From Octopus sinensis (lineage: Eukaryota), in the NCBI RefSeq assembly GCF_006345805.1, contig NC_043026.1, positions 5,084,001 to 5,148,000 on the forward strand: a stretch of 64,000 nt of DNA. Reading direction: 5' to 3'. How positions within the stretch are numbered: position 1 is the stretch's first letter; every line of letters begins with the position of its first letter. Under the pieces are notes generated by a model. The model searched no databases and was not told the origin of the DNA. It worked only from the letters and a program-made list of their open reading frames with translations. The translations under genes were made by a program, and so were the position numbers. Shown here piece after piece: positions 2,708 to 58,427 of this stretch.

Positions 2708-2739
<32 letters not shown>

Positions 2740-3231
2740 GTTGTTATTGTCGTTCTTGGAGACGGCGGTGGTGTTAGTGGTATTAGTAGCATTGACGGCA
2801 CGGTCTTTGGTGGCGGTGATGGTGATGTTGGTATTGTTATTGGTGGCGATGTCTTTGGCAGGGATAGCAGTTTTAGTAGCAGATGCTGCCATGGTGTTGT
2901 TGTCGGTGTTGGTGGTGGACTCACTGGTGGTGTTGAGGGTGCTTGGCCTTGCGACCTTTGTTTTGTATTTGTTGCTGATGTCGATGCTGATGGTGGTGGT
3001 GGTGAAAGCGGTGGTGGTAACAGTAGTATTCGCTTTGTTGCTCTTGTTAGTGGTGGTAGTGGTGACAGTGTTGTTACTACAAGTGGTTGCAGCGTTCATT
3101 GCAAATTCATTGATGATTTCACCTTGCGAGGATAAATTCTTTTTTTCTCCTAGCGTTTCCAGACTAGGAGAAAGCTGGTCGATAGAGGAACGCGACCATC
3201 GTTCTAAAATACAATTTCTTGACATTTTCAA
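1258..3231 (-). CDS. Tx1/L1-clade LINE ORF1 (gag-like, CCHC zinc knuckle)
   Basis: 657-aa ORF with an RRM-like segment (TKVIISGVP) and VVVEGRRPRCYTCGSEAHLKKEC (CX2CX4HX4C), directly upstream of the APE ORF; Thr/Asn low-complexity N-terminus. Confidence 0.88.
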
Positions 3232-4519: not shown

Positions 4520-5694
4520 CTGTGGCATAACTACAGATGAACACCCCATCGACTTTGTTTCCTCATAACTTCCAGGAAAATGGATATTTTAAATGAAACT
4601 TCCACTTTCATTTTCTAACAGAAAAGGATGCTCTCAAAAGAAATCCTCTTTTACAAAGCTCTTATTTAAATCCCCGTGGATAAATCCCAGCAAGAATCTT
4701 CTGAGGCTCTCCAATATTTTACAATTATATAAAGAGAAAGAATCGGGGGCCAGGAAGTGGGGCTAAAAATAATCAGAGATTTTTAAAAGATTCTGTTTAT
4801 TTTTTTATAGCATAAATGCGTTTCTGAGGGGAAAATATTGAAAAGCATAAAAAAAAACACTGAATGAGGAAAAAAAAAGACAAGGAGGGTGGTGTGCTAG
4901 AAACAACAGCCAAATCTCCCTTAAATCACACACTATTTCCCTCGACCCCTTACAAAACATTTTGCCCAAAAATTTCTTTTAAATTGTAATCTGCATCGTT
5001 TGAAATTATTTCTACCAAATTTCATTCAAAAATACGCATTTTTCTACAAAAATACCTTTATACACATGTATATACCTACATATACACACATGTCTTTGCT
5101 ATGTTTTTTAAACACATAAAACTCATAGATGCATAATTTTATAATATTTTACACTTAAACCGCCGCTGGACAATATTTTCAGAGTTGCTTCTTAAAGTGT
5201 CCTTTACTTGTTTGATGATAAACGATACAAATTTCAGAGTATTTGGCTGTTATTTCTAGCATAATGTTAGGCCATCTATAGGACAATATTTGACATGGAT
5301 GCTTTGAAAATTGTCCTTCGATTTTTATTTGTGATGAAACAAAAATGTGAAGGTTTAGGTGGCTCTTTCTAGCATGAAATGAGACCATATACAGGCCAAT
5401 TTTATTTATGAATGCTTCTTACAGTGTTCTTCAAAATTTATATGAAAAATAAAGTGGTTTCTATTTCTAGCATGAAAAATGACCAGCTATGAGAAAGCTT
5501 TTAACGAATGCTTCTTAAAGTGTCCTCTTTTTTTATGAACCCCCGACAGCAACAACAACAACAACAACCCGACGAGGACGAAAGGCAATGTTTGTGCGTG
5601 TGTGCAGTTGGAATGTCACTGCAACAACAACAACAATCTATTCTTATTAAATGTTAAAAACTGTCAGATGCAGACTGCACACACGCACACACAA

Positions 5695-5820
5695 CGCTGA
5701 TGACGACGATGGTGATGATGGTGATGATGACGATGATGATGACGATGATGATGATGATGGTGATGGTGATGATGATAATGATGGTGGTGGTGATGGTGGT
5801 GGCGGCGGCGGTGGTCGTCT
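5695..5820. repeat. (GAT)n/(GGT)n compound microsatellite (also at 49617-49740)
   Basis: Visible tandem triplets; these produce the spurious poly-Asp and poly-His ORFs. Confidence 0.9.
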
Positions 5821-5921
5821 GCTGTTTTTGTTGTTGTTGGTCGTCTGCCTTTTAATGGAGAATCAATGATTATGAAAGTCTCTGCTTTCGGACCAGACAT
5901 TCCTATACATACATGCATGCG

Positions 5922-5955
<34 letters not shown>

Positions 5956-6097
5956 AACATACATACTTATAGCCTTATTTCTATACATACATTCCTAAAT
6001 ATGTGTATATATATATAAACACATGTATATATACTGTATATAAATACACACACACACACACACAAAGAGAGTGTGTTGAGGAATGTTACAACGATAA

Positions 6098-6154
6098 GTG
6101 TTAGTGTGTAGAATGCAATGTATGCGATGCAGGTTCGATTCCCGGGCGAAGCCA
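6098..6154 (+). pseudogene. Degenerate tRNA(Gly)-like sequence (tRNA pseudogene or SINE head), antisense in the 3' flank of the propeller gene; second copy ~50996-51053
   Basis: tagtgtgtagaatgcaa...gcga..caggttcgattcccgggcgaagcca resembles the D-loop (A box) and T-loop (B box, GGTTCGATTCC) of tRNA-Gly, but the anticodon arm is missing. Confidence 0.4.
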
Positions 6155-6207
6155 TTTACAACAAAAAGAAGAAGAAGAAGATTGAAGTTTAATATTTCTG
6201 GAAATAT

Positions 6208-9015
6208 TTATTTGTCAAAATAAAAGAAAGCAAAAGATTGACGTCCAGGAATAATTCCAAAAACCATCAAAGAATTGTCTGAAACATCCAAACCAAGAAC
6301 TTCAAAGACTTCATTATCCTCCCCTCTGAGGAGTAAATATTTAGGATTATCTTTTAATCCCAGGATTTCATCATCTTCAGATGTTTCCTCTTCAATATAT
6401 TGAGGTATTTCGTAAATATTGTTTATTAAATCTGTTATATAAACACATTCACCAATTATGGTCAGACGAGGTCTTGGAATATAATCTTCCGGATAATAAG
6501 TCGTTTCTCCTTCTATTCTTATCTTCCTCACCAAAGACTTTTCCCTGAACCATTCCACAAAACAAAAAACTCCCCACCATCCAGACCCCTTCTCCTCCAT
6601 CTCTCTCCTCAAAACAACAACATCACCAAAAGATGTGACTCCCACATCTTCCACCCCTTCATCTCCCTCAAACTTTCCCTTTCTCCTCATCTTCCCACGA
6701 CACACTTCATCTTTACATTTCCCATCTTTGATATCAACCACATCCACATAATAAGGGTCAAAGATGTAGGAGTTATTGCAATAATAGTAATCCTTGTTGT
6801 TCTTCCATATTCTTTGGTATTTCTTGTGTCTCTCTTCTTGAGTTATGTCTCTAATATAATGACCACCACACACGAGTTGATTGTCGTTGTATTTATAAAT
6901 CCTGTTGTAGTATTTCTCAGTTCTGATGGTTTTTAAACGACGGAGATCCCTGTTGAAGACCCTCATTTCTCTCCCAAAGGCGACAATGAAACATTCCTCT
7001 ATCCACCGACATATGTCCAGTGCTGGTCGTTGTTGTTGTTCATGTTGAAGTATGTCCACTGTTGTTGTTGTTGTTCTGATTAATGTGACACTTTCTCGAA
7101 ATATCAACACACTCACATTCTCATCTAACTTAATTAGTTTACTGTTCCGGTCCCTAATGTCCCTCATATCATAATCAACAGGTTCCTCGAATGCAGGAAT
7201 GGAAAAAGGGACCATTGCTGTCCTATATGGAAGTCTCCTCACTGATATTTCATCAATTCCTGAATTATTAATCTCTGCTATGTAATTACCACATCTCACC
7301 TTTAATCTACCTTTACCAATTATTTCACCTGATTTACCTCTTCTTCTTCCTCCTCCATCTCCATCTCCTCCTCTGTATTCCAATTTATTAATTAATTCAT
7401 TACTGAATATTTCCTTGTTCGTTTCAGATGTAATGGAAGGGAAACGAAGACCAGAATCAAGATTTAATAACGACACAGATTCCAGAATGTTCACTTGGTC
7501 CCCATCAATCTTTATGCAATGACATTCAATCAATTCATTATGTACACACCAGTAAATACCCGCCACTTTTCTCCATATTACACCATAAGGGATGAGACTC
7601 GACCAAACTTGAGATGTCTGCAAATCTTCTCCATTCAGGTGAAATATTTCTTTCCTTTTAGGAACCGTGGCCATTATGTGTGATTCTTGTGTAAAACACA
7701 CACCACCGACTAAACTTGCAACATTTCTGTGACATAGCAACTGGCCGTCTTCATCGAATATTTTAACATTTCCATTATTGGCTTTTTCACACACAACTGT
7801 CTTTCCTTCCTCAGAGACATCAAAATCTTTTACTTGAACAGGACTTTCGTCTGTTTGTAAACGAGCAACCGGGAAGCTGTCTCGATTCACCATAAACAAC
7901 CCTTCAACATACAATTCATTCCATCTCATTCCCCTCCTGGGCCTTCCAACAAACCTTGGTCCTTTACAGTCTATACTGGAGAAATATACTTCATCTTTAT
8001 AAATTCTTTTATTTAAAAATATTCTCTTGTATTCCCCATTCTGAGTCAAACACAAAATATTTCCATATTCAGATGAACCTAAATATTTCTCCCACTGACC
8101 GTAAATGTACAAAAAACTGTCATCAATTGTCATCCTGTCATCACCAAAATACTCCATGTAGTGTCTGACTGAATGTAAATATTGACCACCACTGTTGAAG
8201 AAAATGATGAATCTGCAATTTAAGACAATGATGACATCTTCATCAGTAACTTTAATATCCAGGATTATATCAAAATAATTTCCATCTTCGTTTCTCTTTA
8301 TTAATGGTTCAGGTATGTCTATTTTTTTTATTTCCTTCACACTCGAATGTATTTCATCAATATCAACAAAATGCAAATGTCTTACATCTCTCGATTCACT
8401 AAAAACCAGTTGATTGTTTGATAAAGAAGCCACACATTCATAATAATTTCTCGTTTGGTAAATTACCAACGACAATGGAAACTCCACTTTTAATGTCAAC
8501 AGTTGGTGTTTATCATCATCAGAATGATCCCTATTCGTAATGACCAATGTGTTTGACTGCCATCGACACATTTTAATATTAATATAAACATTCACTTTGA
8601 TTGAATCCATAAGGTGACCATCCAATGTGAATATCTTAATGTTTCCATTCTCCCTGTCCCATCCTGCAATCATATTATTTTCAGTAAGAACCAAACGATT
8701 AATCTCCACTGGTTCTTTGTCTCCCAAATGTTTAGGGGGAGGAATACGTCTGGCTTTATCAGAAACTGTCAGGTCCTGTAGATATAAAGTGGAAGACAAC
8801 ATTTCACTGAGAGAAATGTGTCTGGAAAATACATCCACCAGGTCGATATAATAATTAAGTTGATTATTAGTAACGAGATCATTAACCAACAAATTCTGAT
8901 CGTTTATGGCAAACATACGGCTTCTGTCTATCAGATAAACAGACTTTTGGTCAATAGATCCACCTTGGAGACTGAGGGGACGTTTCACTTGGGACATTAA
9001 AACACTGGGGACCAT
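6208..9015 (-). CDS. Tandem NHL-like beta-propeller protein, C-terminal half (end of propeller 3 plus propellers 4-6)
   Basis: 935-aa ORF of beta-strand-rich repeats with motifs such as WDRENGNIKIFTLDG, CEKANNGNVKIFDEDG, MCRWQSNTLVIT and LDICRWIEECFIVAF. The reading frame is open upstream to 9096. Confidence 0.85.
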   Translation of the reverse strand: MVPSVLMSQVKRPLSLQGGSIDQKSVYLIDRSRMFAINDQNLLVNDLVTNNQLNYYIDLVDVFSRHISLSEMLSSTLYLQDLTVSDKARRIPPPKHLGDKEPVEINRLVLTENNMIAGWDRENGNIKIFTLDGHLMDSIKVNVYINIKMCRWQSNTLVITNRDHSDDDKHQLLTLKVEFPLSLVIYQTRNYYECVASLSNNQLVFSESRDVRHLHFVDIDEIHSSVKEIKKIDIPEPLIKRNEDGNYFDIILDIKVTDEDVIIVLNCRFIIFFNSGGQYLHSVRHYMEYFGDDRMTIDDSFLYIYGQWEKYLGSSEYGNILCLTQNGEYKRIFLNKRIYKDEVYFSSIDCKGPRFVGRPRRGMRWNELYVEGLFMVNRDSFPVARLQTDESPVQVKDFDVSEEGKTVVCEKANNGNVKIFDEDGQLLCHRNVASLVGGVCFTQESHIMATVPKRKEIFHLNGEDLQTSQVWSSLIPYGVIWRKVAGIYWCVHNELIECHCIKIDGDQVNILESVSLLNLDSGLRFPSITSETNKEIFSNELINKLEYRGGDGDGGGRRRGKSGEIIGKGRLKVRCGNYIAEINNSGIDEISVRRLPYRTAMVPFSIPAFEEPVDYDMRDIRDRNSKLIKLDENVSVLIFRESVTLIRTTTTTVDILQHEQQQRPALDICRWIEECFIVAFGREMRVFNRDLRRLKTIRTEKYYNRIYKYNDNQLVCGGHYIRDITQEERHKKYQRIWKNNKDYYYCNNSYIFDPYYVDVVDIKDGKCKDEVCRGKMRRKGKFEGDEGVEDVGVTSFGDVVVLRREMEEKGSGWWGVFCFVEWFREKSLVRKIRIEGETTYYPEDYIPRPRLTIIGECVYITDLINNIYEIPQYIEEETSEDDEILGLKDNPKYLLLRGEDNEVFEVLGLDVSDNSLMVFGIIPGRQSFAFFYFDK

Positions 9016-9024
9016 CTGACGACC

Positions 9025-9180
9025 GCCATGACCACCACCACTAATGTGCTTGAAGAAAGCTTCTATTTCGGACTCTGAATCACTGGAACCATACCATCAC
9101 TACTACTAATACTACCATCACCACTACTAATACTACCATCACCACTGCTAATACTACCATCACTGCCATGACCACCACCA
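9025..9180. repeat. Gly/Ser linker: 21-bp tandem repeat x3 within a 140-bp segment bounded by 16-bp direct repeats GCCATGACCACCACCA
   Basis: Direct repeats at 9025-9040 and 9165-9180; the segment is absent in copy 2 (53915-53940). Confidence 0.9.
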
Positions 9181-11657
9181 CCTATTCTAGTGTTGTACTG
9201 AAAAGCTTTTCCCCTAGTAACAATTAATAGCTTTTCTGTTTTCTTGTCTATTGATAATGATTTCACAAACACAGGGATATTAATTGTCTTAATTACTTCG
9301 ACTTGATTATAATAATTGATGGCTAAAATGTCTAAATGTGATGGTTTATCACAATAACAAACAATTTCACATTCACCCATCTTACACACCCGTACATAAG
9401 GCTGCCTTAATGATACACTTCTCACTCTCTTTGATAGGTTTCCGATGACCCTTAATTGTTTCTGTAGGGGTAACGTGACCCCTATATGATTAGAATCCCA
9501 TCGACATATATGTGTGGCTATAGACGGCAGAGATAATCTGGACACAATGTCTCCTTCCTCAGAAATATACAACAAGCAATCATGCTTGATGTCAGACACC
9601 ACCAACTGTCCATTGGACAGATTACATATTTCGCCAATGACAAGTTTTTGGTCATTCTCCTTTTCTTTGAGTCGTAGATTTAGATTTCTGATATAAGGAT
9701 TTTTAATGGGTAAACAACAGCCAGACGACCGGTCTTGATACATGTAAAGAAGAACCCTGTTGAGTTGAGTGTCCGGGACATAAAGAGTTCCTTGGAAAAC
9801 AGCAATGTGAGGGTGAACAGGGAAAGGCAGTTCCCACTGCCATTTCATTTGTCCATATAGATCGTAACATTTGAGAATAGAGTGTCTCCTGAAGAGGACA
9901 TAGAAATAAACATTATCAGAGTAGATGTGATGAGGGTGGCCATAGAATGGAAGGTATTTTTGAAAAAGTTCTTCACCACATGTGGAATAAAATACCATTT
10001 TATTTTCGTTTCCATCTACGACTACAAAATTAATTGGAGTTGCAGCAATGCTGACATTATGATGTCCAAGAGAAATTCTTTCTGCAATGTCAACTTTATC
10101 TTCGTTGATCAATAGGATATGGACCTCGCTTTTGTTTTCAGTGGTGGTCACAGCCAGACACTTATTTGATACAATATGACATATTTTCATGTAACCAGTT
10201 TGCACCTTTATTAAAGGGCCTTTTCTTAGTTCAGGACAGGTGATATACTGAAATCCTTTCATTTCACGATAAAATACCAGGAATCTGTTTGCATTTATTC
10301 TACAACAGAAAGAAGGAAGCTCAAGGAAAACTAAATTATTTTGGCTAATTATTTCCCCGTTATCAGTGAATAATTTAGCTTTCTTGTTTTTGTAAATTAT
10401 TAATATAGAAGATGTAGACATAGGTAGAATATTTGTAATGTTGTAGCAATCCTCAATATGAATATAGTCTTTTAAACTGGGGGTATGTAGCTGGTGGTTG
10501 TATGACAGTTTGGGCCAAAAGTCTTTATTCATTTGAATACCATGTGGTTTGCCGCAATAATCTGTTACCAAAATGGTATCTTTACCAACAGAAATAGAGC
10601 GGCATTTCCTGCCAACGTCCCTCCTTGTTACACCACCTTTAGCTGAAATTCTATAAATTATTTGTCCCTGGAGGACATAGAAATAATTTTGGTACAGAGA
10701 GATTTTACTTGGGAGGTGCAGAGAATGGGTCTCTACCTCCCATAACTGTTGGCCATCCAGTTTGTAACAGATTACTCTTTTAATACTGGGAAATGATATT
10801 ACAAGTATATTCTGGACCCCTACAGCAATATCTGTAGGGGTTTCTTTGGTAATAAATTGATAGTTTATGGTATTATCCTCCCAATCAAATTGGTAAACTA
10901 TCTTACCAAACATTTCTACACCTATAAGTTTAGAATCTTCCAAGTAACTCACCATATGTAACCCCAACTGTATCCTTTTGATCTTGAAGGTTTTGGGGCT
11001 GATAATAAGAATCATTTCTTGGAATGGGAGGGTTGCCAGAACCATGTCTTCACTGATTCTTGTGAAACTGGTCACAGAAGATTGACAATGGACATCAATT
11101 CTGTCACTGTCTCTTGTGACTAAACTTATTGTCTTACAATGGTGGGAATATGTCATCACTCCCTCCTCTAAGATGACAATATTGGATATTATTGTCCTTT
11201 CTTCAAATTCTTCTCCAGATTCCTCAATGTTTGCTTCTCTAGTCACAACTGGCTGAAGAGGCCGAAATTTATTTTTGGTTATTTTTGGTGTCTGAATGGT
11301 CTTCCATCTGTATGGGTTACAGGTGACATAAATGTCAAAGAGTCTTTGTTGAAACCATTCAAGGTTCTGCTCAATAGAAATATTCTGTTCTTTAGTATAT
11401 TTCAGCAAAATTCCAAGTCTCTCTTTGACCTTTTCTAAAATACAATTGGCACTTAACCCCAGACTTTCATAATGTTTGATCTCCTTAACTATATGCTCCA
11501 TAAACATCATGCTGCAATCATATTGAAGACAAATCCTCTGTATTTTAGCAACTATTTGTTTTTCAGTTCCTTTTGTGCTTTCTTTGTCTCCAGATATGGC
11601 CTTCACTGCTGATTCTCTCTCTGAACTAACCCTAGTATTTTCAGTCTGGTCTTCCAT
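9063..11657 (-). CDS. Tandem NHL-like beta-propeller protein, N-terminal half (helical domain, propellers 1-2, start of 3)
   Basis: 864-aa ORF with motifs such as SNGQLVVSDIKHDCLLYISEEG and HICRWDSNHIGVTLPLQKQL, as in NHL-like propellers of molluscan TRIM-like proteins. A splice acceptor (ttttccttatatttctttacag) lies 7 nt before the ATG. Confidence 0.85.
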   Translation of the reverse strand: MEDQTENTRVSSERESAVKAISGDKESTKGTEKQIVAKIQRICLQYDCSMMFMEHIVKEIKHYESLGLSANCILEKVKERLGILLKYTKEQNISIEQNLEWFQQRLFDIYVTCNPYRWKTIQTPKITKNKFRPLQPVVTREANIEESGEEFEERTIISNIVILEEGVMTYSHHCKTISLVTRDSDRIDVHCQSSVTSFTRISEDMVLATLPFQEMILIISPKTFKIKRIQLGLHMVSYLEDSKLIGVEMFGKIVYQFDWEDNTINYQFITKETPTDIAVGVQNILVISFPSIKRVICYKLDGQQLWEVETHSLHLPSKISLYQNYFYVLQGQIIYRISAKGGVTRRDVGRKCRSISVGKDTILVTDYCGKPHGIQMNKDFWPKLSYNHQLHTPSLKDYIHIEDCYNITNILPMSTSSILIIYKNKKAKLFTDNGEIISQNNLVFLELPSFCCRINANRFLVFYREMKGFQYITCPELRKGPLIKVQTGYMKICHIVSNKCLAVTTTENKSEVHILLINEDKVDIAERISLGHHNVSIAATPINFVVVDGNENKMVFYSTCGEELFQKYLPFYGHPHHIYSDNVYFYVLFRRHSILKCYDLYGQMKWQWELPFPVHPHIAVFQGTLYVPDTQLNRVLLYMYQDRSSGCCLPIKNPYIRNLNLRLKEKENDQKLVIGEICNLSNGQLVVSDIKHDCLLYISEEGDIVSRLSLPSIATHICRWDSNHIGVTLPLQKQLRVIGNLSKRVRSVSLRQPYVRVCKMGECEIVCYCDKPSHLDILAINYYNQVEVIKTINIPVFVKSLSIDKKTEKLLIVTRGKAFQYNTRIGGGGHGSDGSISSGDGSISSGDGSISSSDGMVPVIQSPK

Positions 11658-12265
11658 AATGAATCTGTAAAGAAATATAAGGAAAACATTTAGCTTTGTG
11701 AAAATATTAAAGTTTCAGGGAGATGATGTTTGCTTCATCATTTGAAAAACACCAACAAAACATTTATGTATTTCTGTCAGTGAATTAATCTTGTCTAATT
11801 AATATTTAAACAACTTATTACAATCTATTCTAAGATGTATTAATAAGTTTCATTAATTACATGGAGTCTAAATATTAGAAATAATTATTTTCACTGGAAA
11901 TGATATTTGCTCTCAACATCACCAAGAAATAGTCATGTGTGGCTTAGATTTATTTAACGATAATTAGTCAAAGAGATTCCCCTGCTCCAAAAGCACTCAA
12001 TAACGAGACACTCTAAGCTGTAGAGAAAATTAACTTTAATTGGTGTACATGCTATATTATGTCCCAACACACAGCAATCATGTTCAAACTTCGTTAATAT
12101 GGAACAATTAGCAAAACATAGACTTTATTATGTTTCATAGACATTTGTCAGATACAAGACAGACTGAACATTTTGCTAGTTAGATGGAATATAAGTATTA
12201 CTAATGATTATATGTACTGAAAATGATGGGACAGTCATGGCTGGCTTGGTTTCCATCATATTTAC

Positions 12266-12463
12266 CTGGAATAACAGATAGCAATAAATCTGGAGATGAA
12301 ACTGTTCTTAACCTGACAAATGCTGTAAATCTCTCGACATTTCAATATAATCCACACAATTATCATACACAACATTGATTAACTCGGAAAGCTTATCCAA
12401 AGATGGGCTTTCATATAATCACACTGATAGACAGCATGTTGAGAGGATCGTTATTATTTGTTG
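12266..12463 (-). other. Candidate exon 2 of the propeller gene (copy 2: 57301-57495)
   Basis: Acceptor tctttattaatctcaatcag and donor CAG|GTAAAT are conserved in both copies. The ATG at 12375 gives 36 codons + 2 nt, phase-compatible with the large exon. Confidence 0.5.
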
Positions 12464-13538
12464 CTGATTGAGATTAATAAAGATTGGTTAATGAATTAGC
12501 CCAATTAATGAAAGGTAGGTTCATCTTAATTATCTTTAATATAAGGGACAATGTTTGGGTAGCAATGGGAAAGATGTGTTTGTATGAAAAAGGGGTTTGG
12601 CAGGTGAAGTGTGTTTTGTTTTGTGTTAGGTGAGGAGTTATATCTTGGTGTAGTTTATTATGAAGTATTGGGGGTTTAATGAGGTGGATTAGGAAATATT
12701 GGTGGGGGTGTTTAATGACATTCTGGTGACCCATCATCATCAAAATGATCCTCCACCCCTCCTTGGTCTATGAAATAATGACTGTTACTCTATTGACCCC
12801 AGGAGGAATGAAAAATAAAAGAGACCTTCTTCAGGATACACATACCTGTATATGTATATATGATAGAATGAATGTGTATAATATATACACAAGGATGCAC
12901 ATATGTATATTTATACATCCATACGTCTGTATGTATGTATGATGATCATCATTTTACCCCCACTTTCCATGCTGGAATGGGTTGGATGGTTCAAAGAATA
13001 TCTTGCCTGAAGTTACATTTTCTGATTATCTTTTTACAGCTGGATGCTCTTCCTGACACCAACCACTGCACAATGTGCACTGGGTGCATCTTATGGCACC
13101 ATCGCTAGAGACAATCGCCATGTCCTTGACAAAACTAAAGGTTCCCCTCAATCTCTGGGTGTGACATATACCTTGGGATGGGTGAGAGATCTAGGGTAAT
13201 AAATATATGAAAAGGAGTGGCTGAGTGTTGAGGAGAGACTCAGGTGGGTCCAGTAACATCCCTAGTTTCATTGGAAGAATGGTAAAGAGAAGAGATTTAC
13301 TGCCAATCTTTGTTACAGCAGTAAGATAGTGGAGTAAAAAGAAGAAGAGAGAGTGATTGAGAGATGAAAGATAGAGGTGGGGGTGATAGGGGCGTGACAG
13401 TAGGGACTCAAGGTCCAAGAGTTGACACTCATCAAAGTGGTGTTTGGAGGTCTGGGAATATACCTCCAAAGAACCAGTTTGATAAATGCTAATAAACGAA
13501 ACTTTCGGATTTTGGGTCACTTTGTTACTTCTGCTAAA

Positions 13539-26865: not shown

Positions 26866-27003
26866 TGTGTGTGTGTGTGTGTATGTAAATATATATACAT
26901 ACATACACACACACACACACACATATTATATATATTATGTAATATATATATATATATTATGTATATTATATGTATATATATATATATATATATAATGTAT
27001 GTA

Positions 27004-27040
<37 letters not shown>

Positions 27041-27056
27041 TGTAAACACATGTACA

Positions 27057-27091
<35 letters not shown>

Positions 27092-48290: not shown

Positions 48291-49835
48291 GGTGCTAGAA
48301 ACAACAGCCAAATCTCCCTTAAATCACACACATTTTCCCTCGACCTCTTACAAAACATTTTGCCAACAAATTTCTTTTTAATCGTAATCTACATCGTTTG
48401 AAAGTTATTTCTATAAAATTTCATTCAAAAATACCCATTTCCTGAAATTTATGAGGAGGGAAAATGTCTGGTTGTGTGAATTTTGCGAAACTCCTTTCCG
48501 CAACCCTTCAGAAAATGTTTTTCCAACAAATCCTTACAAAAACTCAATCTATAGGATCTAAGCGATTATTTGTTGAAAGTTTCCTTAAAAAAAATATCTA
48601 TTTTTCTGCAAGTTATGAGGAAACAAAGTCGGTGGGGTATATATCTGTAGTTATGCCGAATTTGCTTCCTCACAACTTTCACAAAATTAAATATTTTTTA
48701 ATGAAATTTTCTACAAATATTCTTCAGATGGTTTAGATTCCGATTAAATCGGAATTCATTGTGAAAATCGCTTGTCCCTGGGTGGGAAACGCAGTTTCAG
48801 AAAATTCACAAGATTCGCCTTTGTTATGAAAGACAAAAAAGTTTTCCCAATAAATCCCCATAGAATCGGAATCCACACCATCTGAAGCATATTTGTAAGA
48901 AATTCCATGAAAAATATCCATTTCTCTGCAAGTTATTAGGGAAGAAGCATATACATCATCAAGGACATTTTACACATGTATATTTATATACCTACATATA
49001 CACACATGTCTTTGCTATGTTTTTTTAAACACATAAACTCATAGATGCATACTTTTATAATATTTAACACTTAAACCGCCCACAGGACAATATTTTAGAG
49101 TTGCTTCTAAAAGTGTCCTTCACGTTTTTTTATGAAAACGATACAAATTTCAGAGTATTTTGGCTGTTATTTTCTAGCATGATGTTAGGCCATCTATAGG
49201 ACAATATTCGACATGGATGCTTTGTAAATTGTCCTTCGATTTTTATTTGTGATGAAACAAAAATGTGAAGGTTTAGGTGGCTCTTTCTAGCATGAAATGA
49301 GACCTATACCAGGTCAATTTATTTATGAATGCTTCTTATCTGTCCTTCAAAATTTATATGAAAAATAAAGTGGTTTCTATTTCTAGCATGAAAATGACCA
49401 GCTATGGGAAGCCTTTACTGAATGCTTCTTAAAATGTCCTTCTCTTTTTTTATGAACCCCCAACAGCAACAACAACAACAACCTACGAGACGAAAGGCAA
49501 TGTTTGTGCGTGTGTGCAGTTGGAATGTCACTGCAACAACAACAACAACAACAATCTATTCTTATTAAACGTTATAAACAGTCAGATGCAGACTGCACAC
49601 ACGCACACACAACGCTGATGACGATGATGATGATGATGATGACGATGATGATGGTGGTGATGATGGCGGTGGTGATGATGATGACGATGATGATGCAGGT
49701 GGCGGTGGTGGTGGTGATGGAGGCGGTGGCGGTTGTCGTCTGCTGTTGTTGTTGTTGGTCGTCTGCCTTTTAATGGAGAATCAATGATTATGAAAGTCTC
49801 TGCTTTCGGACCAGACATTCCTATACATACATGCA

Positions 49836-49874
<39 letters not shown>

Positions 49875-50043
49875 TATATATGTAGCAACGATTTGCCTCA
49901 CCACACACTGAGTTTAGAAATAGCAGTCAAGAGTTATAGCTATTCCTTCTACTAAAAGGGAGATCTCAGTAAAACCACATCACTTAAAGGCAAAACGCAG
50001 GCAAGAGAGAAAGAAATAACGGCAATCATTCTATATTAAGTTA

Positions 50044-50135
50044 CCTACGGACGTACGTTTTCGAAGTTAAGTTTTAGGAAAGCATAAGAATTAGATAATT
50101 ATGTCTTACCCAACTATTCTTCTCATCAGCGTAGG
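50044..50135 (-). ncRNA. Minimal type I hammerhead ribozyme (family B), opposite-strand copy
   Basis: Reverse complement of 50588-50678 with one extra A after GAAA. Confidence 0.78.
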
Positions 50136-50587
50136 ACTCTACAATTATGAATAATTGTATATTAAATTTGGAGATACTAGAAGACATCACCTCACCCAAA
50201 GTATCAGAGTGAGTCAAAGCCGTTACTAGTATCGCCAAATTCAAAGTGTGAATGAAAGTTTGTGTCACCAACCCCTTCCTACCAGCGTGCCGCCAAGACA
50301 ATATGTTGTGGTCATTTACTGGGATGAAATATGGTTATCAGTAAAATATAGGGTGAAATCAATTAATTTGGAATAATCATTAATTTCACCAAGTAGATTT
50401 CGGCATGTAAAAAGCCCCATTCGAGGAAAGTTTAGTAATACTAAGTAATTAAGGGTTTAGCAACGATTTGCCTCACCACACACCACCAATTTAGAAATAG
50501 CAGTCAAAGATTATAGCTATTCCTTCTACTAAAAGGAGATCCAGTAAAACCACATCACTTAAAAGGCAAAACGCATAATTGTAGAGT

Positions 50588-50678
50588 CCTACGCTGATGA
50601 GAAGAATAGTTGGGTAAGACATAATTATCTAATTCTTATGCTTTCCTAAAACTTAACTTCGAAACGTACGTCCGTAGG
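50588..50678 (+). ncRNA. Minimal type I hammerhead ribozyme (family B)
   Basis: Stem I CCUACG/CGUAGG, CUGAUGA, stem II GAAG..CUUC, GAAA, AC[GUAC]GU, cleavage triplet GUC; fully canonical core. Confidence 0.88.
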
Positions 50679-50817
50679 TAACTTAATATAGAATGATTGC
50701 CGTCATTTCTTTCTCTCTTGCCTGCGTTTTGCCTTTTAAGTGATGTGGTTTTACTGAGATCTCCCTTTAAGTAGAAGGAATAGCTATAACTCTTTGACTG
50801 CTATTATTACTGATAAC

Positions 50818-50848
<31 letters not shown>

Positions 50849-51117
50849 CACACACAGAAACATACATACTTATAGCCTTATTTCTATATATACGTTCCTA
50901 AATATCTGTGTATATATATATAACACATGTATATATACTGTATAAATATACACTCACACACAAAGAGAGAGTGTTGAGAAATGTTACAACAATAAGTGTT
51001 AGTGTGTAGAATGCAATGTATGCGATGCAGGTTCGATTCACGGGCGAAGCCATTTACATCAACAACAATAAGAAGAAGAAGAAGAAAGATTTGAAGTTTA
51101 ATATTTCTGGAAATATT

Positions 51118-54100
51118 TATTTGTCAAAATAAAAGAAAGCAAAAGATTGACGTCCAGGAATAATTCCAAAACCATCAAAGAATTGTCTGAAACATCTAAA
51201 CAAAGAACTTCAAAGACTTCATTATCATACCCTCTGAGGAGTAAATATTTTGAATTATCTTTTAATTCCAGGATTTCATCATCTTCAGATGTTTCTCTTC
51301 AATATGTTGAGGTATTTCGTAAATATTGTTTATGAAATCTGTTATATAAACACATTCACCAATTATGGTCAGACGAGCTCTTGGAATATAGTATTCTGGA
51401 TCATAAAAACATTCTTTCTTCTATTCTTATCCTCCTCACCAAAGACTTTTCCTGAACCATTCCACAAAAAAAAAAAACCTCCCACCCTCCAAACCTCCTC
51501 TTCTTTGTCTCCCTCCTCAAAACAACAACATCACCAAAGATGTGACTCCCACACCATCCACCCCTTCATCTTCCTCCAACCTTCTCCATCTCCTCACCTT
51601 CCCACGACACACTCCATCTTTACATTTCCCATCATTGATATCAACCACATCCACATAATAAGGGTCAAAGATGTCGGGGTCATCGCAATATAGTAATACT
51701 TGTTGTTTCTCCATATTCTTTTGTATTTCTTGTCTCCCTTTTCTTGAGTTATGTCTCTAATATAATGACCACCACACACGAGTTGATTGTCGTTGTATTT
51801 ATAATCCTGTTGTAGTATTTCTCAGTTTTTATGGTTTTTAAACCACAGAGATCCCTGTCAAAGACCCTCATTTCTCTCCCAAAGGCGACAATGAAACATT
51901 CCTCTGTCCACCGACATATGTCCAGTGCTGGTCGTTGTTGTTGTTTCATGTTGAAGTATGTCCACTGTTGTTGTTGTTGTTGTTCTGATTAAGTGACCAC
52001 TTTCTCGAAACATCAACACACTCACATTCTCATCTAACTTAATTAGTTTACTGTTCCGGTCCTTAATGTCCCTCAAATCGTAATCAACAGGTTCCTCGTA
52101 TGCAGGAATGGAAAAAGGACCATTGCTGTCCTATAGAAGTCCGCCGCACTGATAGTTCATCAATTCCTGAATTATTAATCTCTGCTATGTAATTACCACA
52201 TCTCACCTTTAATCTACCTTACTATTATTTCACCTGATTTACCTCTTCTTCCTCCTCCATCTCCATCTCCTCCTCTGTATTCCAAGTTGTTAATTAATTC
52301 ATTACTGAATATTTCCTTGTTCGTTTCAGATGTAATGGAAGGAAACGAAGACCAGAATCAAGATTTAATAACGACCAGATTCCAGAATGTTCACTTGTCC
52401 CCCATCAATCTTTATGCAATGACATTCAATCAATTCATTATGTACACACCAGTAATACCCGCCACTTTTCTCCCTATTACACCATACGGGATGAGACTCG
52501 ACAAACTTGAGATGTCTGCAAATCTCCCCATTCAGTTGAAATATTTCTTTCCTTTTAGGACCGTGGCCATTATGTGTGATTCTTGTGTAAAACACACACC
52601 ACCAACTAAACTTGCAAACTTTCTGTGACGTAGCAACTGGCCGTCGTCATCGAATATTTAACATTTCCATTATTGGCTTTTTCACACACAACTGTCTTTC
52701 CTTCCTCAGAGACATCAAAATCTTTTACTTGAACAGGACATTCGTCTGTTGTAAACGAGCAACCGGGAAACTGTCTCGATTCACCATAAACAACCCTTCA
52801 ACATACAATTCATTACTTTCTTTTCCCTCCTGGGGCTTCCAACGAACCTTGGTCCTTTACAGTCTATACTGGAGAAATATACTTTATCTTTATAAATTCT
52901 TTCATTTAAAAATATTCTCTTGTATTCCCCATTCTGGGTCAACACACAAATGTTTCGATATCCAGATGACTAAAACATTTCTCCCACTCACCATAAATGT
53001 ACAAAAAACTGTCATCAATTGTCATCCTGTCATCACTACCAAGATAATCCATGTAGTGTCTGACTGAATGTAAATATTGACCATTACTGTTGAAGAAATG
53101 ATGACTCTTTCGTTGAAGACAATGATGACATCTTCATCAGTAACTTAATATCCCGGATTCTATCAGAATAATTTCCATCTTCTTTTCTCCTTATTAATGG
53201 TTCAGGTATGTCTATTTTTTTTTATTTCCTCCACCTCACTGAATGTATTTCATCAAGATCAACAAATGCAAATGTCTTACATCTCTTTCGATTCACTAAA
53301 AACCAGTTGATTGTTTGATAAAGAAGCCACACATTCATAATTATTTCTTGTTTGATAAATTACCAACGACAATGGAAATTCCACTTTTAATGTCAACAGT
53401 TGGAGTTTATCATCATCTTCAGCATCCCCAGTCATAATGACCAGTGTGTTTGACTGCCATTGACACATTTAATATAATCATAACATTCACTTTGATTGAA
53501 TCCAAAAGCTGACCATCCAATGTGAATATCTTAATGTTTCCATTCTCCCTGTCACATACTGCAATCAGATTATTTTCAGTAAGAACCAAAGATATAATCC
53601 TCGCTGGTCTTTTGTCTCCCAAATTTTAGGGAGAGGAATATGTCTGGCTTTATCAGAAACTGTCATGTCCTGTAGATATAAAGTGGAAGACAACATTTCA
53701 CTGAGAGAAATTTTCTGGAAAATACATCCACCAGGTCGATATAATAATTTAGTTGATTATTAGTACGAGATCATTAACCAACAAATTCTGATCGTTTATG
53801 GCAAACATACGCGGCTCTGTCTATCAGATAAACAGACGTTTGGTCAATAGATCCACCTTGGAGACTGAGGGGGACGTTTTCACTTGGGACATTAAAACAC
53901 TGGGGACCATCTGACGACCGCCCTGACCACCACCACCTATTGTAGTGTTGTACTGAAAAGCTTTTCCCCTAGTAACAATAATAGCTTTTCTGTTTCTTGT
54001 CTATTGATAATGATTCACAACACACAGGGATTAATTGTCTTAATTACTTTCAACTTGATTATAATAATTGATAGCTAAAATGTCTAAATGTGATGGTTTA

Positions 54101-56603
54101 TCACAATAACAAACAATTTCACCTTCACCCATCTTACACACCCGTACATAAGGCTTCCTTAATGATACACTTCTCACTGTCTTTGATAGTTTCCGATCAC
54201 CCTTAATTGTTTCTGTAGGGGTAATGTGACCCCTATATGATTAGAATCCCATCGACATATATCTGTGGCTGTAGACGGCAGAGATAATCTAGACACAATG
54301 TCTCCTTCCTCAGAAATGTACAACAAGCAATCATGGTTGATGTCAGACACCACCAACTGTCCATTGGACAGATTACATATTTCGCCAATGACAAGTTTTT
54401 GGTCATTCTCCTTTCTTTGAGTCGTAGATTTAGATTTCTGATGTAAGGATTTTTAATGGGTAAAAGACAGCCAGACGACCGGTCATGATTCTTATAAGAA
54501 GAACCCTGTTGAGTTGAGTGTCCGGGACATAAAGAGTTCCTTGGAAAACAGCAATGTGAGGGTGAACAGGGAAAGGCAGTTCCCACTGCCATTTCATTTG
54601 TCCATATAGCTCGTAACATCTGAGAATAGAGTATCTCCTGAAGAGGACATAGAAATAAACATTATCAGAGTAGATGTGATGAGGGTGGCCATAGAATGGA
54701 AGGTATTTTTGAAAAGTTTTTCTCCACATGTGGAATAAAATACCATTTTATTTTCGTTTTCATCTACGACTACAAAATTAATTGGAGTTGCAGCAATGCT
54801 GACATTATGATGTCCCAGAAAAATTCGTTCAGCAATGTCAACTTTATCTTCGTTGATCAATAAGATATGGACCCCTCGCTTTTGTTTTCAGTGGTGGTCA
54901 CAGCCAAACTTATTTGATACAATATGACATATTTTCATGTAACCAGTTTTGCACCTTTATTAAAGGGCCTTTTCTTAGTTCAGGACAGGTGATATACTGA
55001 AACCCTTTCATTTCAGGATAAATACCAGGAATCTGTTTGCGTTTATTCTACAACAGAAAGAAGGAAGCTCAAGGAAAACTGAATTATTTTGGTTAATTAT
55101 TTCCCCGTTATCAGTGAATAATTTAGCTTTCTTGTTTTTGTAAATTATTAATATAGAAGATGTAGACATAGGTAAATATTTGTAATGTTGTAGCAATCCT
55201 CAATATAAATATAGTTGTTCAATGTGGGGTCCATAGCTTGGGGTTTATGACTGCCTGGGCCAAAAGCTTCATTTGTTCCAATGATATGAAGGACATCAAA
55301 ATAATCGGTTACAAAAATTTTTCTTTGCCAACAGAAATATGGCGGCATTTCATGCCAATTTCTCTTGTTGTCACAGCACCTGTACCTGATATCCGATAAA
55401 TAATATGTCCCTGAAGGACATAAAAATGGTTTTGGTACACAGAGATGTGGCTTGGAATGTCCAGGGAATTGGTATCCACCTCAAATAACTGCTGGCCATC
55501 CACATTGTAACAGGTAACCCTGTTAATATTGGAAAAGGATACTAAGAGTTTATTTTGTGCTCCTACAGCAATATCTGAAGGGGTTTCTTTGGTTATGAAT
55601 TCGTATTTTATTCTATTCTCTTCCCAGTCAATGACGTATATGGTCCGACCAAACATTTCTACACCTATAAGCGTAGAATGTTCCAAATAAGAAACCAAGA
55701 TTAATCCTAGCTGAATTCTTTTGATTCGCAAACTTAAAGGGTTGATAATAAGAATCATCTTTCGAAATGGGATGGTGGCGAGGACTGTGTCTTTACTGAT
55801 TCTGGTAAAATCAGTGACGGAGATGAGCAATAAACTTCATTTCTGTTGCCGTCTCTTGTTATACAACATATTGACATATAATGGCGGGAATATGTTACAA
55901 TACCCCCTTGTATGACGACAATATTGGATATTGTTTGCTTAAGTCTTCACCAGATTCCTCAATCTCTACTTCTCTGGTCACAACTGGCCGAAGAGGACGA
56001 AATTTTGTGATTACTTTTGGTGGTTCTATGGTCTTGTGGTTGTATGGGTTACAGGTGACATAAATGTCAAAGAGTCTTTGTTGAAACCAATCAAGATTTT
56101 GGTGAACAAAATCATTATTTTGTTCTGCAAATTCCAGAAATCTTGGCATTTTACGTTTGATATTACGTAGATTCGAGATCCATTTAAACCCAGAGAGTCC
56201 ATGTGATTACATTTATCCTTTACATAATCTATAAACGTATTGATGTGGTCTGTTTTGATTAGTGTTCGGTAACATGTCACAATATGAAGGAAACTTGGTA
56301 ACATGGACTTTTCCTGTTCTTTAGATTTCTTTCTGTCTTTTCTTTCCTGTTCTTCTGTTTTCTTTGTGTTTGTGTGTATGTAATATTTGGGTAAGAATTG
56401 GTGTAGTTCCTTATAAATTGCTGTTGCATCACAGACTGTGGTGGGAATGAGAGCCAACATTTTGTTTTCTTCATTAATCTTCTCCTTTTATGAATATAGA
56501 ATTATTATCTTTTTCTGTTAAATATATTCTTTTCTGTGGATTTTGTTTTCTTCCTTTGGAATACAATTTATCTCTTCAAAATTCACTAATTTTTACATGA
56601 AAG
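51118..56603 (-). pseudogene. Propeller gene copy 2, large exon fragmented by many 1-bp indels (pseudogene or assembly error)
   Basis: Collinear homology with 6208-11664. ORF fragments match the copy 1 peptides; the junction AFQYNTTIGGGGQGGRQMVPSVL is in frame; acceptor ttttcattttatttcag at 56604. Confidence 0.8.
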
Positions 56604-58427
56604 CTGAAATAAAATGAAAACTTTATTAGTTTTGTGAAAAGCTTTTGGTAAAAATAATATTTACTTGATTCATTCAAAGAATTTCAAGGAAAACACACAC
56701 ATTTCATTAAATATATTAAACAAATTGTTTATTTGACAGTGAAGTTAAACATTTAACTGTTTCCAATGGAATAATCATTAGAAATAAAACTTGAAGATAT
56801 AAATACACCATTATCTTTATTGACTGAATATAAGTGATGGTGAAAAGTTTTGTAGTAAGAAGGAATATAAATATTTTGTTGAGGTTATTCTACAGATATT
56901 ATCGGTAGAAATTATAGCCAGGACTGATTTCCTGCTACAACATTTCATATCGAAATGTCAGATGGAAACAAACAATGAGATCAAAGAGAAAAACATCTGT
57001 TGTTTGTTCTCATTGTGTATCTCATTGTTTGTTTACATCTGACATCTCGATAGGAAAGGCTTTAGCAAAAATCAGAGCCAACCATAATTTCTATGGAATA
57101 TCAATAGAATAATGTGAAAAACACTGCTACAAAGTAGAATGTGGTGTTGACTTCTAAAACGATTTAATATATTTTACAGGAATTTATGTTGCATAATGAA
57201 ATACCACGTCCTACAAATCAGGAATATAAGTATTATTAATAATTATATGCACTGGAAATGATGTGACAGTCATGGTTGGCTTGGTTTCCATCATATTTAC
57301 CTGGATTCACAGATACAATAAAGCTGGAGATGAAACTGTTCTTAACCTGACAAATGCTGTAAATCTCTTGACATTTCAATATAATCCACACAATTATCAT
57401 ACACAACATTGATTAACTCGGAAAGCTTATCCAAAGATGGCTTTCATATAATCACACTGATAGACAGCATGTTGAGAGGATCGTTATTTTTGTTGCTGAT
57501 TGAGATAATAAAGATTGGTTAATGAATAAGCCTAATTAGTGAAAGGTAGGTTCCTCCTAATTATCTTTTAATATAAGGACAATGTTTGGGTAGCAATGAG
57601 AAAGATGTGTCTGTATGAAAAAGGGGTTTGGCAGGTGAAGTGTGTTTTTTGTTTTGTGTTAGGTGAGGAGTTATAACTTGGTGTAGTTTATTATGAAGTG
57701 TTGGGGGTTTAATGAGGTGGATTAGGAAATATTGGTGGGGTGTTTTTAATGACATTCTGGTGACCCATCATCATCAGAATGATCCTCCACTGCCTCCTTG
57801 GTCTATGAAATAATGACTGTTACTCTATTGACCCCAGGAGGAATGAAAATAAAAGAGACCTTCTTCAGGATATACATACATATATATGTATATATGATAG
57901 AATGAATGTGTATAATATATACACAAGGATGCACATATGTATATTTATACATCCATACGTCTGTATGTATGATGATCATCATTTTACCCCACCCTTTCCA
58001 TGCTGGAATGGGTTGGATGTTCAGAGAATATCTTGCCTGAAGTTACATTTTTCTGGTTTTTCTTTCTACAGCTGGATGCTCTTCCTGACACCAACCACTG
58101 CACGATGTGTACTGGGTGCATCTTATGGCACCATCACTAGAGACAATCGCCTTCCTTGACGAAACTAAGGTTCCCCTCAATCTCTGGGTGTGACATATAC
58201 CTTGGGATGTGTGAGAGATCTAGGGTAATAAATATATGCAAAGGAGTGGCTGAGTGTTGGGGAGAGACCCAGGTAGGTCCAGTAACATCCCTAGTTTCAT
58301 TGGAAGAATGGTGAAGAGAAGAGATTTACTGCCAATCTTTGTCACAGCAGTAAGATAGTAGAGTAAAAAGAAGAAGAGAGAGTGATTGAAAGATGAAAGA
58401 TAGAGGTAGGGGTGATAGGGGCATGGC

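What the first reader, a model, noticed from the sequence alone, without database searches (positions are those of the whole stretch)
10465..12188. Sharply bounded hypervariable cassette: N-terminus + propeller 1 differ between otherwise near-identical copies
The copies are >90% identical on both sides, but 10465-12188 vs 55215-57224 diverge. By hand alignment propeller 1 is ~70% aa identical (about 52 changes in ~168 aa, mostly conservative), the N-terminal extension differs in length and sequence, and intron 2 barely aligns. The right breakpoint falls in the propeller 1/2 linker. Inference: gene conversion or domain swap with a third paralog, or homogenisation of propellers 2-6 while the first module is kept diverse. 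This pattern is typical of specificity-determining domains in immune or recognition genes. The conservative changes imply copy 2's module evolved under selection.
Basis: partly seen in the sequence, partly recalled or inferred. Interest (0 to 1): 0.78.

Follow-up and report, generated by a model that had tools for sequence, protein, structure and literature searches.

The report
Swapped front module in octopus paralogs
Two neighbouring copies of an uncharacterised, octopus-only giant beta-propeller gene are about 95% alike except for a 2-kb front end, because they carry two ancient alternative versions of that module that recombination among tandem paralogs has shuffled; this is a clean but ordinary case of mosaic gene-family evolution, not a hypervariable cassette.

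Summary
Two direct 8.3-kb repeats (5066-13393 and 48982-58422) are 93-98% identical. The exception is a block at about 10450-12190 in copy 1 and 55197-57226 in copy 2, which is 69-81% identical in its coding part and unalignable upstream.

The gene lies on the minus strand. It is one long intronless ORF of about 1,800 aa in intact relatives: an N-terminal helical domain followed by tandem beta-propellers. The family was found only in octopods and has no Pfam or PDB sequence match.

The block is not hypervariable. It is one of two discrete, old module types: dS is 0.72-0.85 between types against 0.06-0.13 within a type, and dN/dS is 0.24-0.28. Both types occur in other paralogs of Octopus vulgaris and O. 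sinensis, including intact full-length genes.

Copy 2 is a recombinant. About 158 diagnostic sites of type 2 are followed by 43 of type 1, with one switch at 55187-55207, inside the predicted propeller 1/2 linker (MaxChi 335, 0 of 2000 permutations). An independent O. vulgaris locus and an intact 1,813-aa protein share this junction, so it is not a mis-assembly.

The immune or recognition reading has no support.

The parts
5066..13393 (-). Copy 1 of the 8.3-kb repeat unit (gene plus flanks), module class 1-1-1.
   Evidence: Self-BLAST and MAFFT. It is 94.7% identical over 7.7 kb to O. sinensis locus L006, which holds an intact 1,811-aa ORF.
48982..58422 (-). Copy 2 of the repeat unit, module class 2-2-1 (recombinant). 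As assembled it is a pseudogene.
   Evidence: about 56 frameshifting indels and 3 in-frame stops. Private substitution rate is 27.6/kb in coding sequence against 19-23/kb in the flanks.
9063..11657 (-). Copy 1 ORF A (864 aa): N-terminal helical domain, linker, then three beta-rich domains.
   Evidence: ORF list. AF2 model. Foldseek returns only multi-propeller proteins.
6208..9015 (-). Copy 1 ORF B (935 aa), the C-terminal half of the same protein in intact relatives.
   Evidence: P0013, L005 and L006 read through from A to B.
9087..9089 (-). Approximate site of a 1-nt deletion in a T-run that splits copy 1 into ORF A and ORF B.
   Evidence: Alignment with L006 and L001. Copy 1 reads ATGG-TTCCAGTG where they read ATGGTTTCCAGTG.
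9047..9162 (-). Ser/Gly-rich linker insert. Present in copy 1, L001 and L006; absent in copy 2, L002-L005. Its presence is discordant with module type.
10450..12190 (-). Type-1 version of the divergent block in copy 1.
11310..11657 (-). N-terminal helical domain, type 1 (aa 1-116).
   Evidence: AF2 helices 9-21, 29-65, 70-90 and 99-113. The N-helix tree has three deep clades.
10515..11192 (-). Beta-propeller 1, type 1 (aa 156-381), probably six blades.
   Evidence: AF2 of aa 150-400: pLDDT 79.4, pTM 0.73, 23-24 strands. Foldseek matches propellers, with TMq 0.61-0.66 to Brat and TRIM3 NHL domains and to Vgb lyase.
10440..10460 (-). Position in copy 1 homologous to the recombination junction of copy 2 (aa 399-406, propeller 1/2 linker).
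   Evidence: Diagnostic sites and MaxChi. Linker aa 382-409 has pLDDT below 50.
55197..57226 (-). Type-2 version of the block in copy 2: upstream region, N-helix type 2, propeller 1 type 2.
   Evidence: 94-100% identical to L001, 95.5-99.4% to L007 and 92-98% to L005, but 50-81% to type-1 copies.
55187..55207 (-). Recombination junction in copy 2: type 2 on the 5' side, type 1 on the 3' side.
   Evidence: About 158 type-2 diagnostic sites, then 43 type-1 sites, with a single switch. MaxChi chi2 335 with 0 of 2000 permutations reaching it. L007 has the same switch.
12186..12195 (-). 5' edge of the block in copy 1. Homology ends about 10 nt upstream of a TAG that both types keep in register, which may be a splice acceptor.
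   Evidence: Alignment. The splice-site reading is inference only.
57221..57230 (-). 5' edge of the block in copy 2.
9741..10439 (-). Beta domain 2 (aa 407-639).
   Evidence: AF2 model.
9192..9638 (-). Beta domain 3 (aa 674-822).
   Evidence: AF2 model.

Best explanation
The window holds two tandem paralogs, 45 kb apart, of an octopod-restricted gene. The gene encodes a cytosolic-looking protein of about 1,800 aa: an N-terminal helical domain followed by tandem beta-propellers.

The family sits in a megabase-scale cluster. Its 5' flank and everything 3' of propeller 1 or 2 stay 92-98% alike in all copies, through exchange among paralogs (unequal crossing-over or interlocus gene conversion) and recent duplication.

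The front module exists as a few old, discrete versions: N-helix types 1, 2 and 3, and propeller-1 types 1 and 2. Copy 1 carries type 1. Copy 2 belongs to a recombinant sub-lineage, type 2 up to the propeller 1/2 linker and type 1 afterwards. One crossover or conversion at 55187-55207 created that sub-lineage, and it was then propagated by duplication.

I infer the cause of the sharp edges. Once the two versions were about 25% diverged, heteroduplex rejection would stop conversion tracts at the border of the island, so the island persists while its surroundings are homogenised.

Shown: the two types, the junction, the tree discordance, purifying selection on propeller 1, and the propeller fold.

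Inferred: the mechanism that keeps the edges sharp, and whether selection maintains the alternative types.

Function is unknown. The likeliest role is a scaffold or binding protein whose front propeller and helical head give alternative partner specificities.
For: - Sliding identity shows the block.
- Type-2 and type-1 blocks recur in other loci: L001, L005 and L007 carry type 2; L002, L003, L004 and L006 carry type 1.
- Copy 2 shows a single clean switch of diagnostic sites.
- MaxChi is 335 with 0 of 2000 permutations reaching it.
- Segment trees disagree. For propeller 1 the split is {c2, L001, L005} against the rest at 100/100. For the next 108 codons it is {L001, L005} against the rest, now including c2, at 100/100. 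Further 3' the tree is star-like.
- In protein trees with outgroups, O. bimaculoides sits inside the type-1 propeller clade but outside all vulgaris/sinensis copies for the 3' part.
- dS is 0.72-0.85 between types, against 0.06-0.13 within a type and 0.03-0.12 in the 3' part. dN/dS is 0.24-0.28.
- L001 is nearer to vulgaris type-1 copies (2.9-3.6%) than to the same-type sinensis copy L005 (5.4%) in the 3' part.
- The module census gives 222 x8, 221 x3 (including the intact 1,813-aa P0058), 311 x5 and 111.
- Intact ORFs of both types exist.
- The propeller fold is supported by the models and fold searches.
Against: - Only seven related loci were aligned at DNA level, and the cluster was not censused completely.
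- The species and assembly of the window are unknown, so some 'paralog' comparisons may be orthologous or allelic.
- Within-type divergence in the block (1-5%) is about the same as in the 3' part. A recent burst of duplication from a few progenitors explains much of the similarity without ongoing conversion.
- No donor outside the cluster was found for the type-2 propeller.
- The anti-recombination explanation for the sharp edges is untested.
- Copy 2's many 1-nt deletions could partly be consensus errors.
Confidence: 0.85

Rival explanations
1. The block is a hypervariable specificity cassette under diversifying selection, as in immune or recognition receptors. The first module is kept diverse by selection for many variants.
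For: - The front module (N-helix plus propeller 1) is the only part that differs.
- Several head types are combined with several propeller types.
- The family is a lineage-restricted, expanded tandem cluster with many pseudogenes, a profile shared with many immune families.
Against: - dN/dS between types is 0.24-0.28, and no bootstrap replicate exceeded 0.55.
- Only 2 propeller-1 types and 3 N-helix types were seen among about 55 family proteins.
- Within-type variation is no higher than in the rest of the gene.
- Substitutions are not enriched in loops.
- No signal peptide is evident in the N-terminal sequence by eye, and no immune-type domain was found.
Confidence: 0.1
2. Copy 2's chimeric structure is an assembly artefact, a false join or mixed consensus of reads from a type-2 and a type-1 paralog.
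For: - Copy 2 carries an unusual load of 1-nt deletions: 41, of which 56% lie in homopolymers of 3 or more against 21.5% in the background.
- There is an assembly gap elsewhere in the window, at 37739-37838.
Against: - The same junction, at the same diagnostic sites, is present in O. vulgaris locus L007 (OX597841.1, 9.26 Mb), which has an intact 827-aa ORF.
- It is also present in proteins P0058 (1,813 aa) and P0059.
- The switch lies between sequence that is 25% diverged on one side and 15% on the other, where an overlap-based false join is unlikely.
- Copy 2's private changes are uniform across coding sequence and flanks, as expected for real neutral decay.
Confidence: 0.03
3. The type-2 block was imported once into the cluster by ectopic conversion from a distant paralog on another chromosome, rather than being an old resident lineage whose surroundings were homogenised.
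For: The type-2 N-helix groups with those of dispersed paralogs P0011 and P0025 (70-72% identity, support 91). Type 1 groups with P0013.
Against: - The type-2 propeller 1 is no closer to any dispersed paralog (61-66%) than to type 1 (65%).
- Its clade is sister to type 1 in the propeller-1 tree.
- No donor has been identified.
Confidence: 0.2

Closest known systems
Mosaic divergence of tandem paralogs through interlocus gene conversion or partial concerted evolution. Examples: HMA4 copies of Arabidopsis halleri (bioRxiv 10.1101/2025.10.29.685298) and mammalian gene pairs (PMC2720389).
   Same: - Tandem copies are homogenised over most of their length, with islands of high divergence.
- Phylogenetic discordance occurs between adjacent segments.
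- In the homogenised part, paralogs are closer to each other than to same-type copies of the sister species.
   Different: - Here the island is a whole functional module (head domain plus first propeller).
- It exists as discrete old types reused in many copies.
- It sits in a cluster of dozens of members of an uncharacterised octopod-only family.
Domain shuffling in clustered receptor families by unequal crossing-over (KIR and Ly49 genes, plant NLR clusters).
   Same: Hybrid genes arise by recombination between paralogs at or near domain borders. Modules are recombined in different combinations.
   Different: - No evidence here of diversifying selection, of receptor or immune function, or of the defining domains (Ig, lectin, NB-ARC/LRR).
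- One of the two 3' junctions lies inside a propeller, not at a border.
NHL-repeat six-bladed beta-propellers (Brat, TRIM3) and other small propellers (virginiamycin B lyase).
   Same: The predicted fold of propeller 1 gives TMq 0.61-0.66 and Foldseek probability 1.0.
   Different: No sequence-level match to NHL, WD40 or any Pfam family, and 10-15% identity in the structural alignments. Here at least three such domains follow each other in one chain.
Fungal NACHT-WD40 (HNWD/HET) genes, with concerted evolution of propeller repeats and swapped N-terminal effector domains. Own knowledge, not searched here.
   Same: A propeller-containing paralog family with recombination-driven exchange and alternative N-terminal modules.
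   Different: No NACHT or other NTPase domain. The exchange is between whole modules of paralogs, not between individual repeats. There is no sign of positive selection.

Membership tests
Beta-propeller fold (generic) | Repeated four-stranded antiparallel sheets (blades) closing into a ring. | tested here: met
   AF2 of aa 150-400: pLDDT 79.4, pTM 0.73, 23-24 strands. All top Foldseek PDB matches are propellers at probability 1.0. This is model-based, not experimental.
NHL repeat family (Pfam PF01436) | Sequence match to the NHL repeat profile. | tested here: not met
   No Pfam hit at E<=1 for ORF A or ORF B, and none at E<=0.1 for four relatives. The profile search against PDB gives TRIM3 only at E=2.5.
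NHL repeat family (Pfam PF01436) | Six-bladed propeller of about 270 aa superposable on Brat or TRIM3. | tested here: inconclusive
   TMq is 0.61-0.66 to 1q7f, 4zlr, 5ex7 and 7qrw, but it is equally good to seven- and eight-bladed propellers.
WD40 repeat family | Sequence match to WD40 profiles. | tested here: not met
   Only a sub-threshold hit to WDR90_beta-prop_4th, at E=0.069 and 12.7 bits against a cut-off of 50.
Interlocus gene conversion / partial concerted evolution | Significant recombination breakpoint between paralogs. | tested here: met
   MaxChi chi2 335 with 0 of 2000 permutations reaching it. Clean 2-to-1 switch of about 200 diagnostic sites.
Interlocus gene conversion / partial concerted evolution | Adjacent segments give conflicting, well-supported trees. 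| tested here: met
   Copy 2 changes clade with 100/100 support on both sides of the junction.
Interlocus gene conversion / partial concerted evolution | In the homogenised part, paralogs within a species are closer than same-type copies between species. | tested here: met
   L001 is 2.9-3.6% from vulgaris type-1 copies and 5.4% from sinensis type-2 L005. O. bimaculoides falls outside all vulgaris/sinensis copies for the 3' part but inside the type-1 clade for propeller 1. Few loci were available, and the window's species is unknown.
Hypervariable specificity cassette under diversifying selection | dN/dS above 1, overall or at surface sites. | tested here: not met
   Overall dN/dS is 0.24-0.28 with CI 0.16-0.41. 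Site-level models were not run.
Hypervariable specificity cassette under diversifying selection | Many variants, with more diversity in the cassette than elsewhere. | tested here: not met
   There are two propeller-1 types and three N-helix types. Within-type distance is 1-5%, against 2.6-7.7% in the 3' part.
Hypervariable specificity cassette under diversifying selection | Variation concentrated on a binding surface. | tested here: inconclusive
   Strands 34/130 against loops 30/91, Fisher p=0.29. Model coordinates could not be used to map faces.
STAND/NLR-type sensors with C-terminal propellers | Central NACHT or NB-ARC NTPase domain. | tested here: not met
   No such Pfam hit in six family proteins.

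The most novel reading that the evidence does not exclude
The N-helix plus first propeller is a functional 'head' kept as a small set of alternative versions for tens of millions of years; the types predate the O. bimaculoides split. Recombination re-deals this head onto a common, homogenised five-propeller body. That would give octopods a combinatorial family of cytosolic binding or scaffold proteins, possibly an innate-immune or self/non-self recognition system of a new kind.
Probability: 0.15. Interest if true: 0.7.

Novelty: new member of a known kind. Interest (0 to 1): 0.38.

Why it matters
It gives a well-resolved example of module-level mosaic evolution in a cephalopod tandem cluster, with a junction mapped to about 20 nt. 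It also flags a large, octopod-restricted family of about 1,800-aa multi-propeller proteins that has no name, no domain annotation and no literature. The family has dozens of gene models on one O. vulgaris chromosome. For annotation, it shows that these genes are single-exon and that many current models are truncated or split at frameshifts. It does not by itself reveal a new mechanism or function.

Tried and rejected
- Pfam on ORF A, ORF B and four relatives gave no family.
- PDB sequence searches with a single protein and with a profile gave nothing significant.
- Two profile jobs against the 1.84-billion-protein library failed because the profile exceeded 1,200 positions. The third ran.
- Exact-protein look-ups for P0004 and for window ORF B were not on record, so the window's assembly could not be identified.
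- Self-BLAST of the 1,811-aa protein found no internal repeats, so the propellers are not detectably similar to each other at that level.
- Searches for six locus identifiers returned no papers, and general cephalopod gene-family searches returned nothing on this family.
- I considered that the unit is a transposable element and rejected it. It has no transposase, RT or integrase domain, and conserved single-copy relatives sit on other chromosomes in three Octopus species and in Argonauta.
- I considered that the block reflects local decay of the copy 2 pseudogene and rejected it. The same block is intact in L001, L005 and L007.
- The test for enrichment of substitutions in loops was negative.
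Full report
**1. What is in the window**

Self-comparison shows a direct duplication, 5066-13393 against 48982-58422. A MAFFT alignment scored in 100-column steps gives 93-98% identity on both sides of a block.
- Identity is still 98% at 10310-10410.
- It drops to 69-81% over 10510-11410 (copy 2 55255-56140).
- The sequence is essentially unalignable over 11410-12180 (56140-57217).
- It returns to 87-97% at 12186/57221.

**2. Gene structure**

The coding strand is minus. Copy 1 has two long ORFs, 9063-11657 (864 aa) and 6208-9015 (935 aa).

Homologs show that these are two halves of one protein. P0013 reads through, and loci L006 and L005 of O. sinensis carry uninterrupted ORFs of 1,811 and 1,799 aa. 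Gene models that translate directly from the DNA (for example P0006, 3,258 nt for 1,085 aa) show the coding region is a single exon.

Copy 1 is split by a 1-nt deletion in a T-run at about 9087-9089. The deletion lies inside a Ser/Gly-rich linker insert that is itself present or absent independently of module type.

Against an intact reference, copy 2 carries about 56 frameshifting indels and 3 in-frame stops. Forty-one are single-base deletions, and 56% of those lie in homopolymers of 3 or more, against a 21.5% background.

The private substitution rates point to a real, unconstrained pseudogene.
- Copy 2: 27.6/kb in coding sequence, 19-23/kb in flanks.
- Copy 1: 9.3/kb in coding sequence, 12-14/kb in flanks.

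Consensus errors cannot be excluded.

**3. What the protein is**

There is no Pfam family and no PDB sequence match.

AlphaFold2 on ORF A with 22 family sequences (mean pLDDT 57.6) predicts these segments:
- an N-terminal helical domain (aa 9-113);
- a disordered linker;
- a beta domain at aa 159-375 (pLDDT 70-83);
- a disordered linker at aa 382-409;
- beta domains at aa 407-639 and aa 674-822.

Foldseek returns only multi-propeller proteins. Modelling aa 150-400 alone gives pLDDT 79.4, pTM 0.73 and 23-24 strands. The best structural matches are small propellers, namely virginiamycin B lyase and the Brat and TRIM3 NHL domains, at TMq 0.61-0.66.

'Propeller 1' is thus supported as a fold. Membership of NHL or WD40 is not.

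A profile search of 1.84 billion representative proteins found only 23 clusters at E<=0.001. The ten representatives whose clusters I looked up are almost all from Octopus vulgaris, O. sinensis, O. bimaculoides and Argonauta hians; one is an unnamed ENA sequence. O. vulgaris alone has dozens of gene models on chromosome OX597841.1. No paper mentions the loci.

**4. The block is one of two old, discrete types**

I fetched seven related loci and aligned them with both window copies.

Inside the block, copy 2 compares as follows:
- 94-100% identical to L001 (O. vulgaris);
- 95.5-99.4% to L007 (O. vulgaris);
- 92-98% to L005 (O. sinensis);
- 50-81% to copy 1, L002, L003, L004 and L006, which are 96-98% alike among themselves.

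Distances in propeller 1 are 24-26% between types and 1-5% within a type. In the 3' coding part all pairs are 2.6-7.7% apart, with no type structure.

Nei-Gojobori estimates for propeller 1 between types are dN 0.20-0.23, dS 0.72-0.85 and dN/dS 0.24-0.32. The bootstrap CI for dN/dS is 0.16-0.41.
- Within-type dS is 0.06-0.13.
- The 3' part has dS 0.03-0.12.

Fixed type differences run at 13-27 per 100 nt from about 12200 down to 10143. Only 3 occur in the next 3.9 kb.

Type-separating amino-acid changes are spread evenly over strands and loops (34/130 against 30/91, p=0.29). This is old divergence under purifying selection, not hypervariability.

**5. Copy 2 is a recombinant**

I used sites fixed for one base in type-1 copies and another in L001 and L005. 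At these sites copy 2 reads about 158 type-2 states, then 43 type-1 states, with a single switch.

Maximum chi-square places the break between 55207 and 55187, which is 10460-10440 in copy 1. Chi2 is 335, and 0 of 2000 permutations reach it. The break falls at aa 399-406, inside the predicted propeller 1/2 linker.

L001 and L005 stay type 2 for another 300 nt or so, to about aa 505 inside propeller 2. A break at a domain border is therefore not a rule.

Segment trees agree with this.
- For propeller 1, copy 2 groups with L001 and L005 at 100/100.
- For the next 108 codons, copy 2 groups with the type-1 copies at 100/100.
- Further 3' the tree is star-like.

L007 has exactly the same switch and an intact 827-aa ORF. 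Proteins P0058 (1,813 aa, full length) and P0059 have the same 2-2-1 make-up. The junction is therefore inherited and real, not a mis-assembly of this window.

**6. Family-wide modularity**

I classified about 55 family proteins by N-helix, propeller 1 and the first part of propeller 2. The counts are 2-2-2 (8), 2-2-1 (3), 3-1-1 (5), 1-1-1, and more distant members.

N-helix types 1, 2 and 3 form three deep clades. Each also contains dispersed, distant paralogs, so heads and propellers have been recombined more than once.

For propeller 1, an O. bimaculoides protein sits inside the type-1 clade. For the 3' part, O. bimaculoides falls outside all vulgaris and sinensis copies of both types. In the 3' part, L001 is closer to vulgaris type-1 copies than to the sinensis type-2 copy.

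Together these results show that the front-module types predate the species, while the rest of the gene and its flanks share recent ancestry across types. This is partial concerted evolution, recent duplication, or both.

**7. The 5' edge**

Homology resumes upstream at about 12190 / 57226. That is about 10 nt before a TAG that both types keep in register after a pyrimidine-rich stretch. It may be a splice acceptor at the start of the large exon, but no transcript data were available, so this is only an inference.

**8. Mechanism**

Shown:
- two module types;
- a mapped recombination junction;
- discordant trees;
- purifying selection;
- the propeller fold.

Inferred:
- The sharp edges persist because conversion tracts cannot extend into sequence that is about 25% diverged, so the island survives while its surroundings are homogenised.
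- Selection for alternative heads may add to this.
- Function remains unknown. An intracellular scaffold or binding protein with alternative front modules is the most economical guess.

**9. Verdict**

The 'exchange with a third paralog' and 'homogenised body, diverse head' ideas are supported. 'Hypervariable', 'immune/recognition' and 'intron' are not.

The phenomenon is a known kind, mosaic divergence among tandem paralogs (for example bioRxiv 10.1101/2025.10.29.685298 and PMC2720389). Here it occurs in an undescribed octopod-specific family.

Noticed in passing
window 49946-50846: A 0.9-kb insertion specific to copy 2, about 270 nt downstream of the gene's stop. It has internal inverted repeats (49919-50149 against 50805-50574, 97.9%), which looks like a foldback or MITE-like element.
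   Followed up: partly
window 34359-35180 vs 36790-37609, gap 37739-37838: A 0.8-kb inverted repeat at 99.3% identity lies next to a 100-N assembly gap. It may be a real palindromic element or an assembly artefact.
   Followed up: no
window 1258-3231 (-): A 657-aa ORF rich in Asn/Thr runs, with a sub-threshold CCHC zinc knuckle (E=0.0034). It is probably a gag-like remnant of a retroelement.
   Followed up: partly
window 13977-14445 (+), 26103-27143 (-), 47775-48311 (-): Short ORFs that resemble C-terminal parts of non-LTR reverse transcriptases. Only 26541-27143 gave a weak RVT_1 hit (E=0.0083). They sit in the spacers between the two gene copies.
   Followed up: partly
window 9047-9162 and loci L001, L006: A Ser/Gly-rich (GSDGSISS-like) tandem-repeat insert in the linker between the two halves of the protein. 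It is bounded by a short direct repeat (GGTGGTCATGGC) and is present or absent independently of module type.
   Followed up: partly
L003, L004; proteins P0002, P0004, P0071, P0074-P0076: A third head type replaces only the N-terminal helical domain (copy-1 equivalent about 11302-11646) and is joined to a type-1 propeller. This is a second, nested cassette with its own edges.
   Followed up: partly
O. vulgaris OX597841.1 gene models: Many annotated family proteins are fragments (155-1,260 aa) of what are single about 5.4-kb ORFs, split at frameshifts or given artificial introns. The annotation of this cluster looks unreliable.
   Followed up: partly
proteins P0030/P0049/P0050 and P0035/P0054: Distant family members of about 1,670 aa on other chromosomes share at least 90% identity across the three Octopus species. 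These conserved single-copy relatives contrast with the fast-turnover cluster.
   Followed up: no
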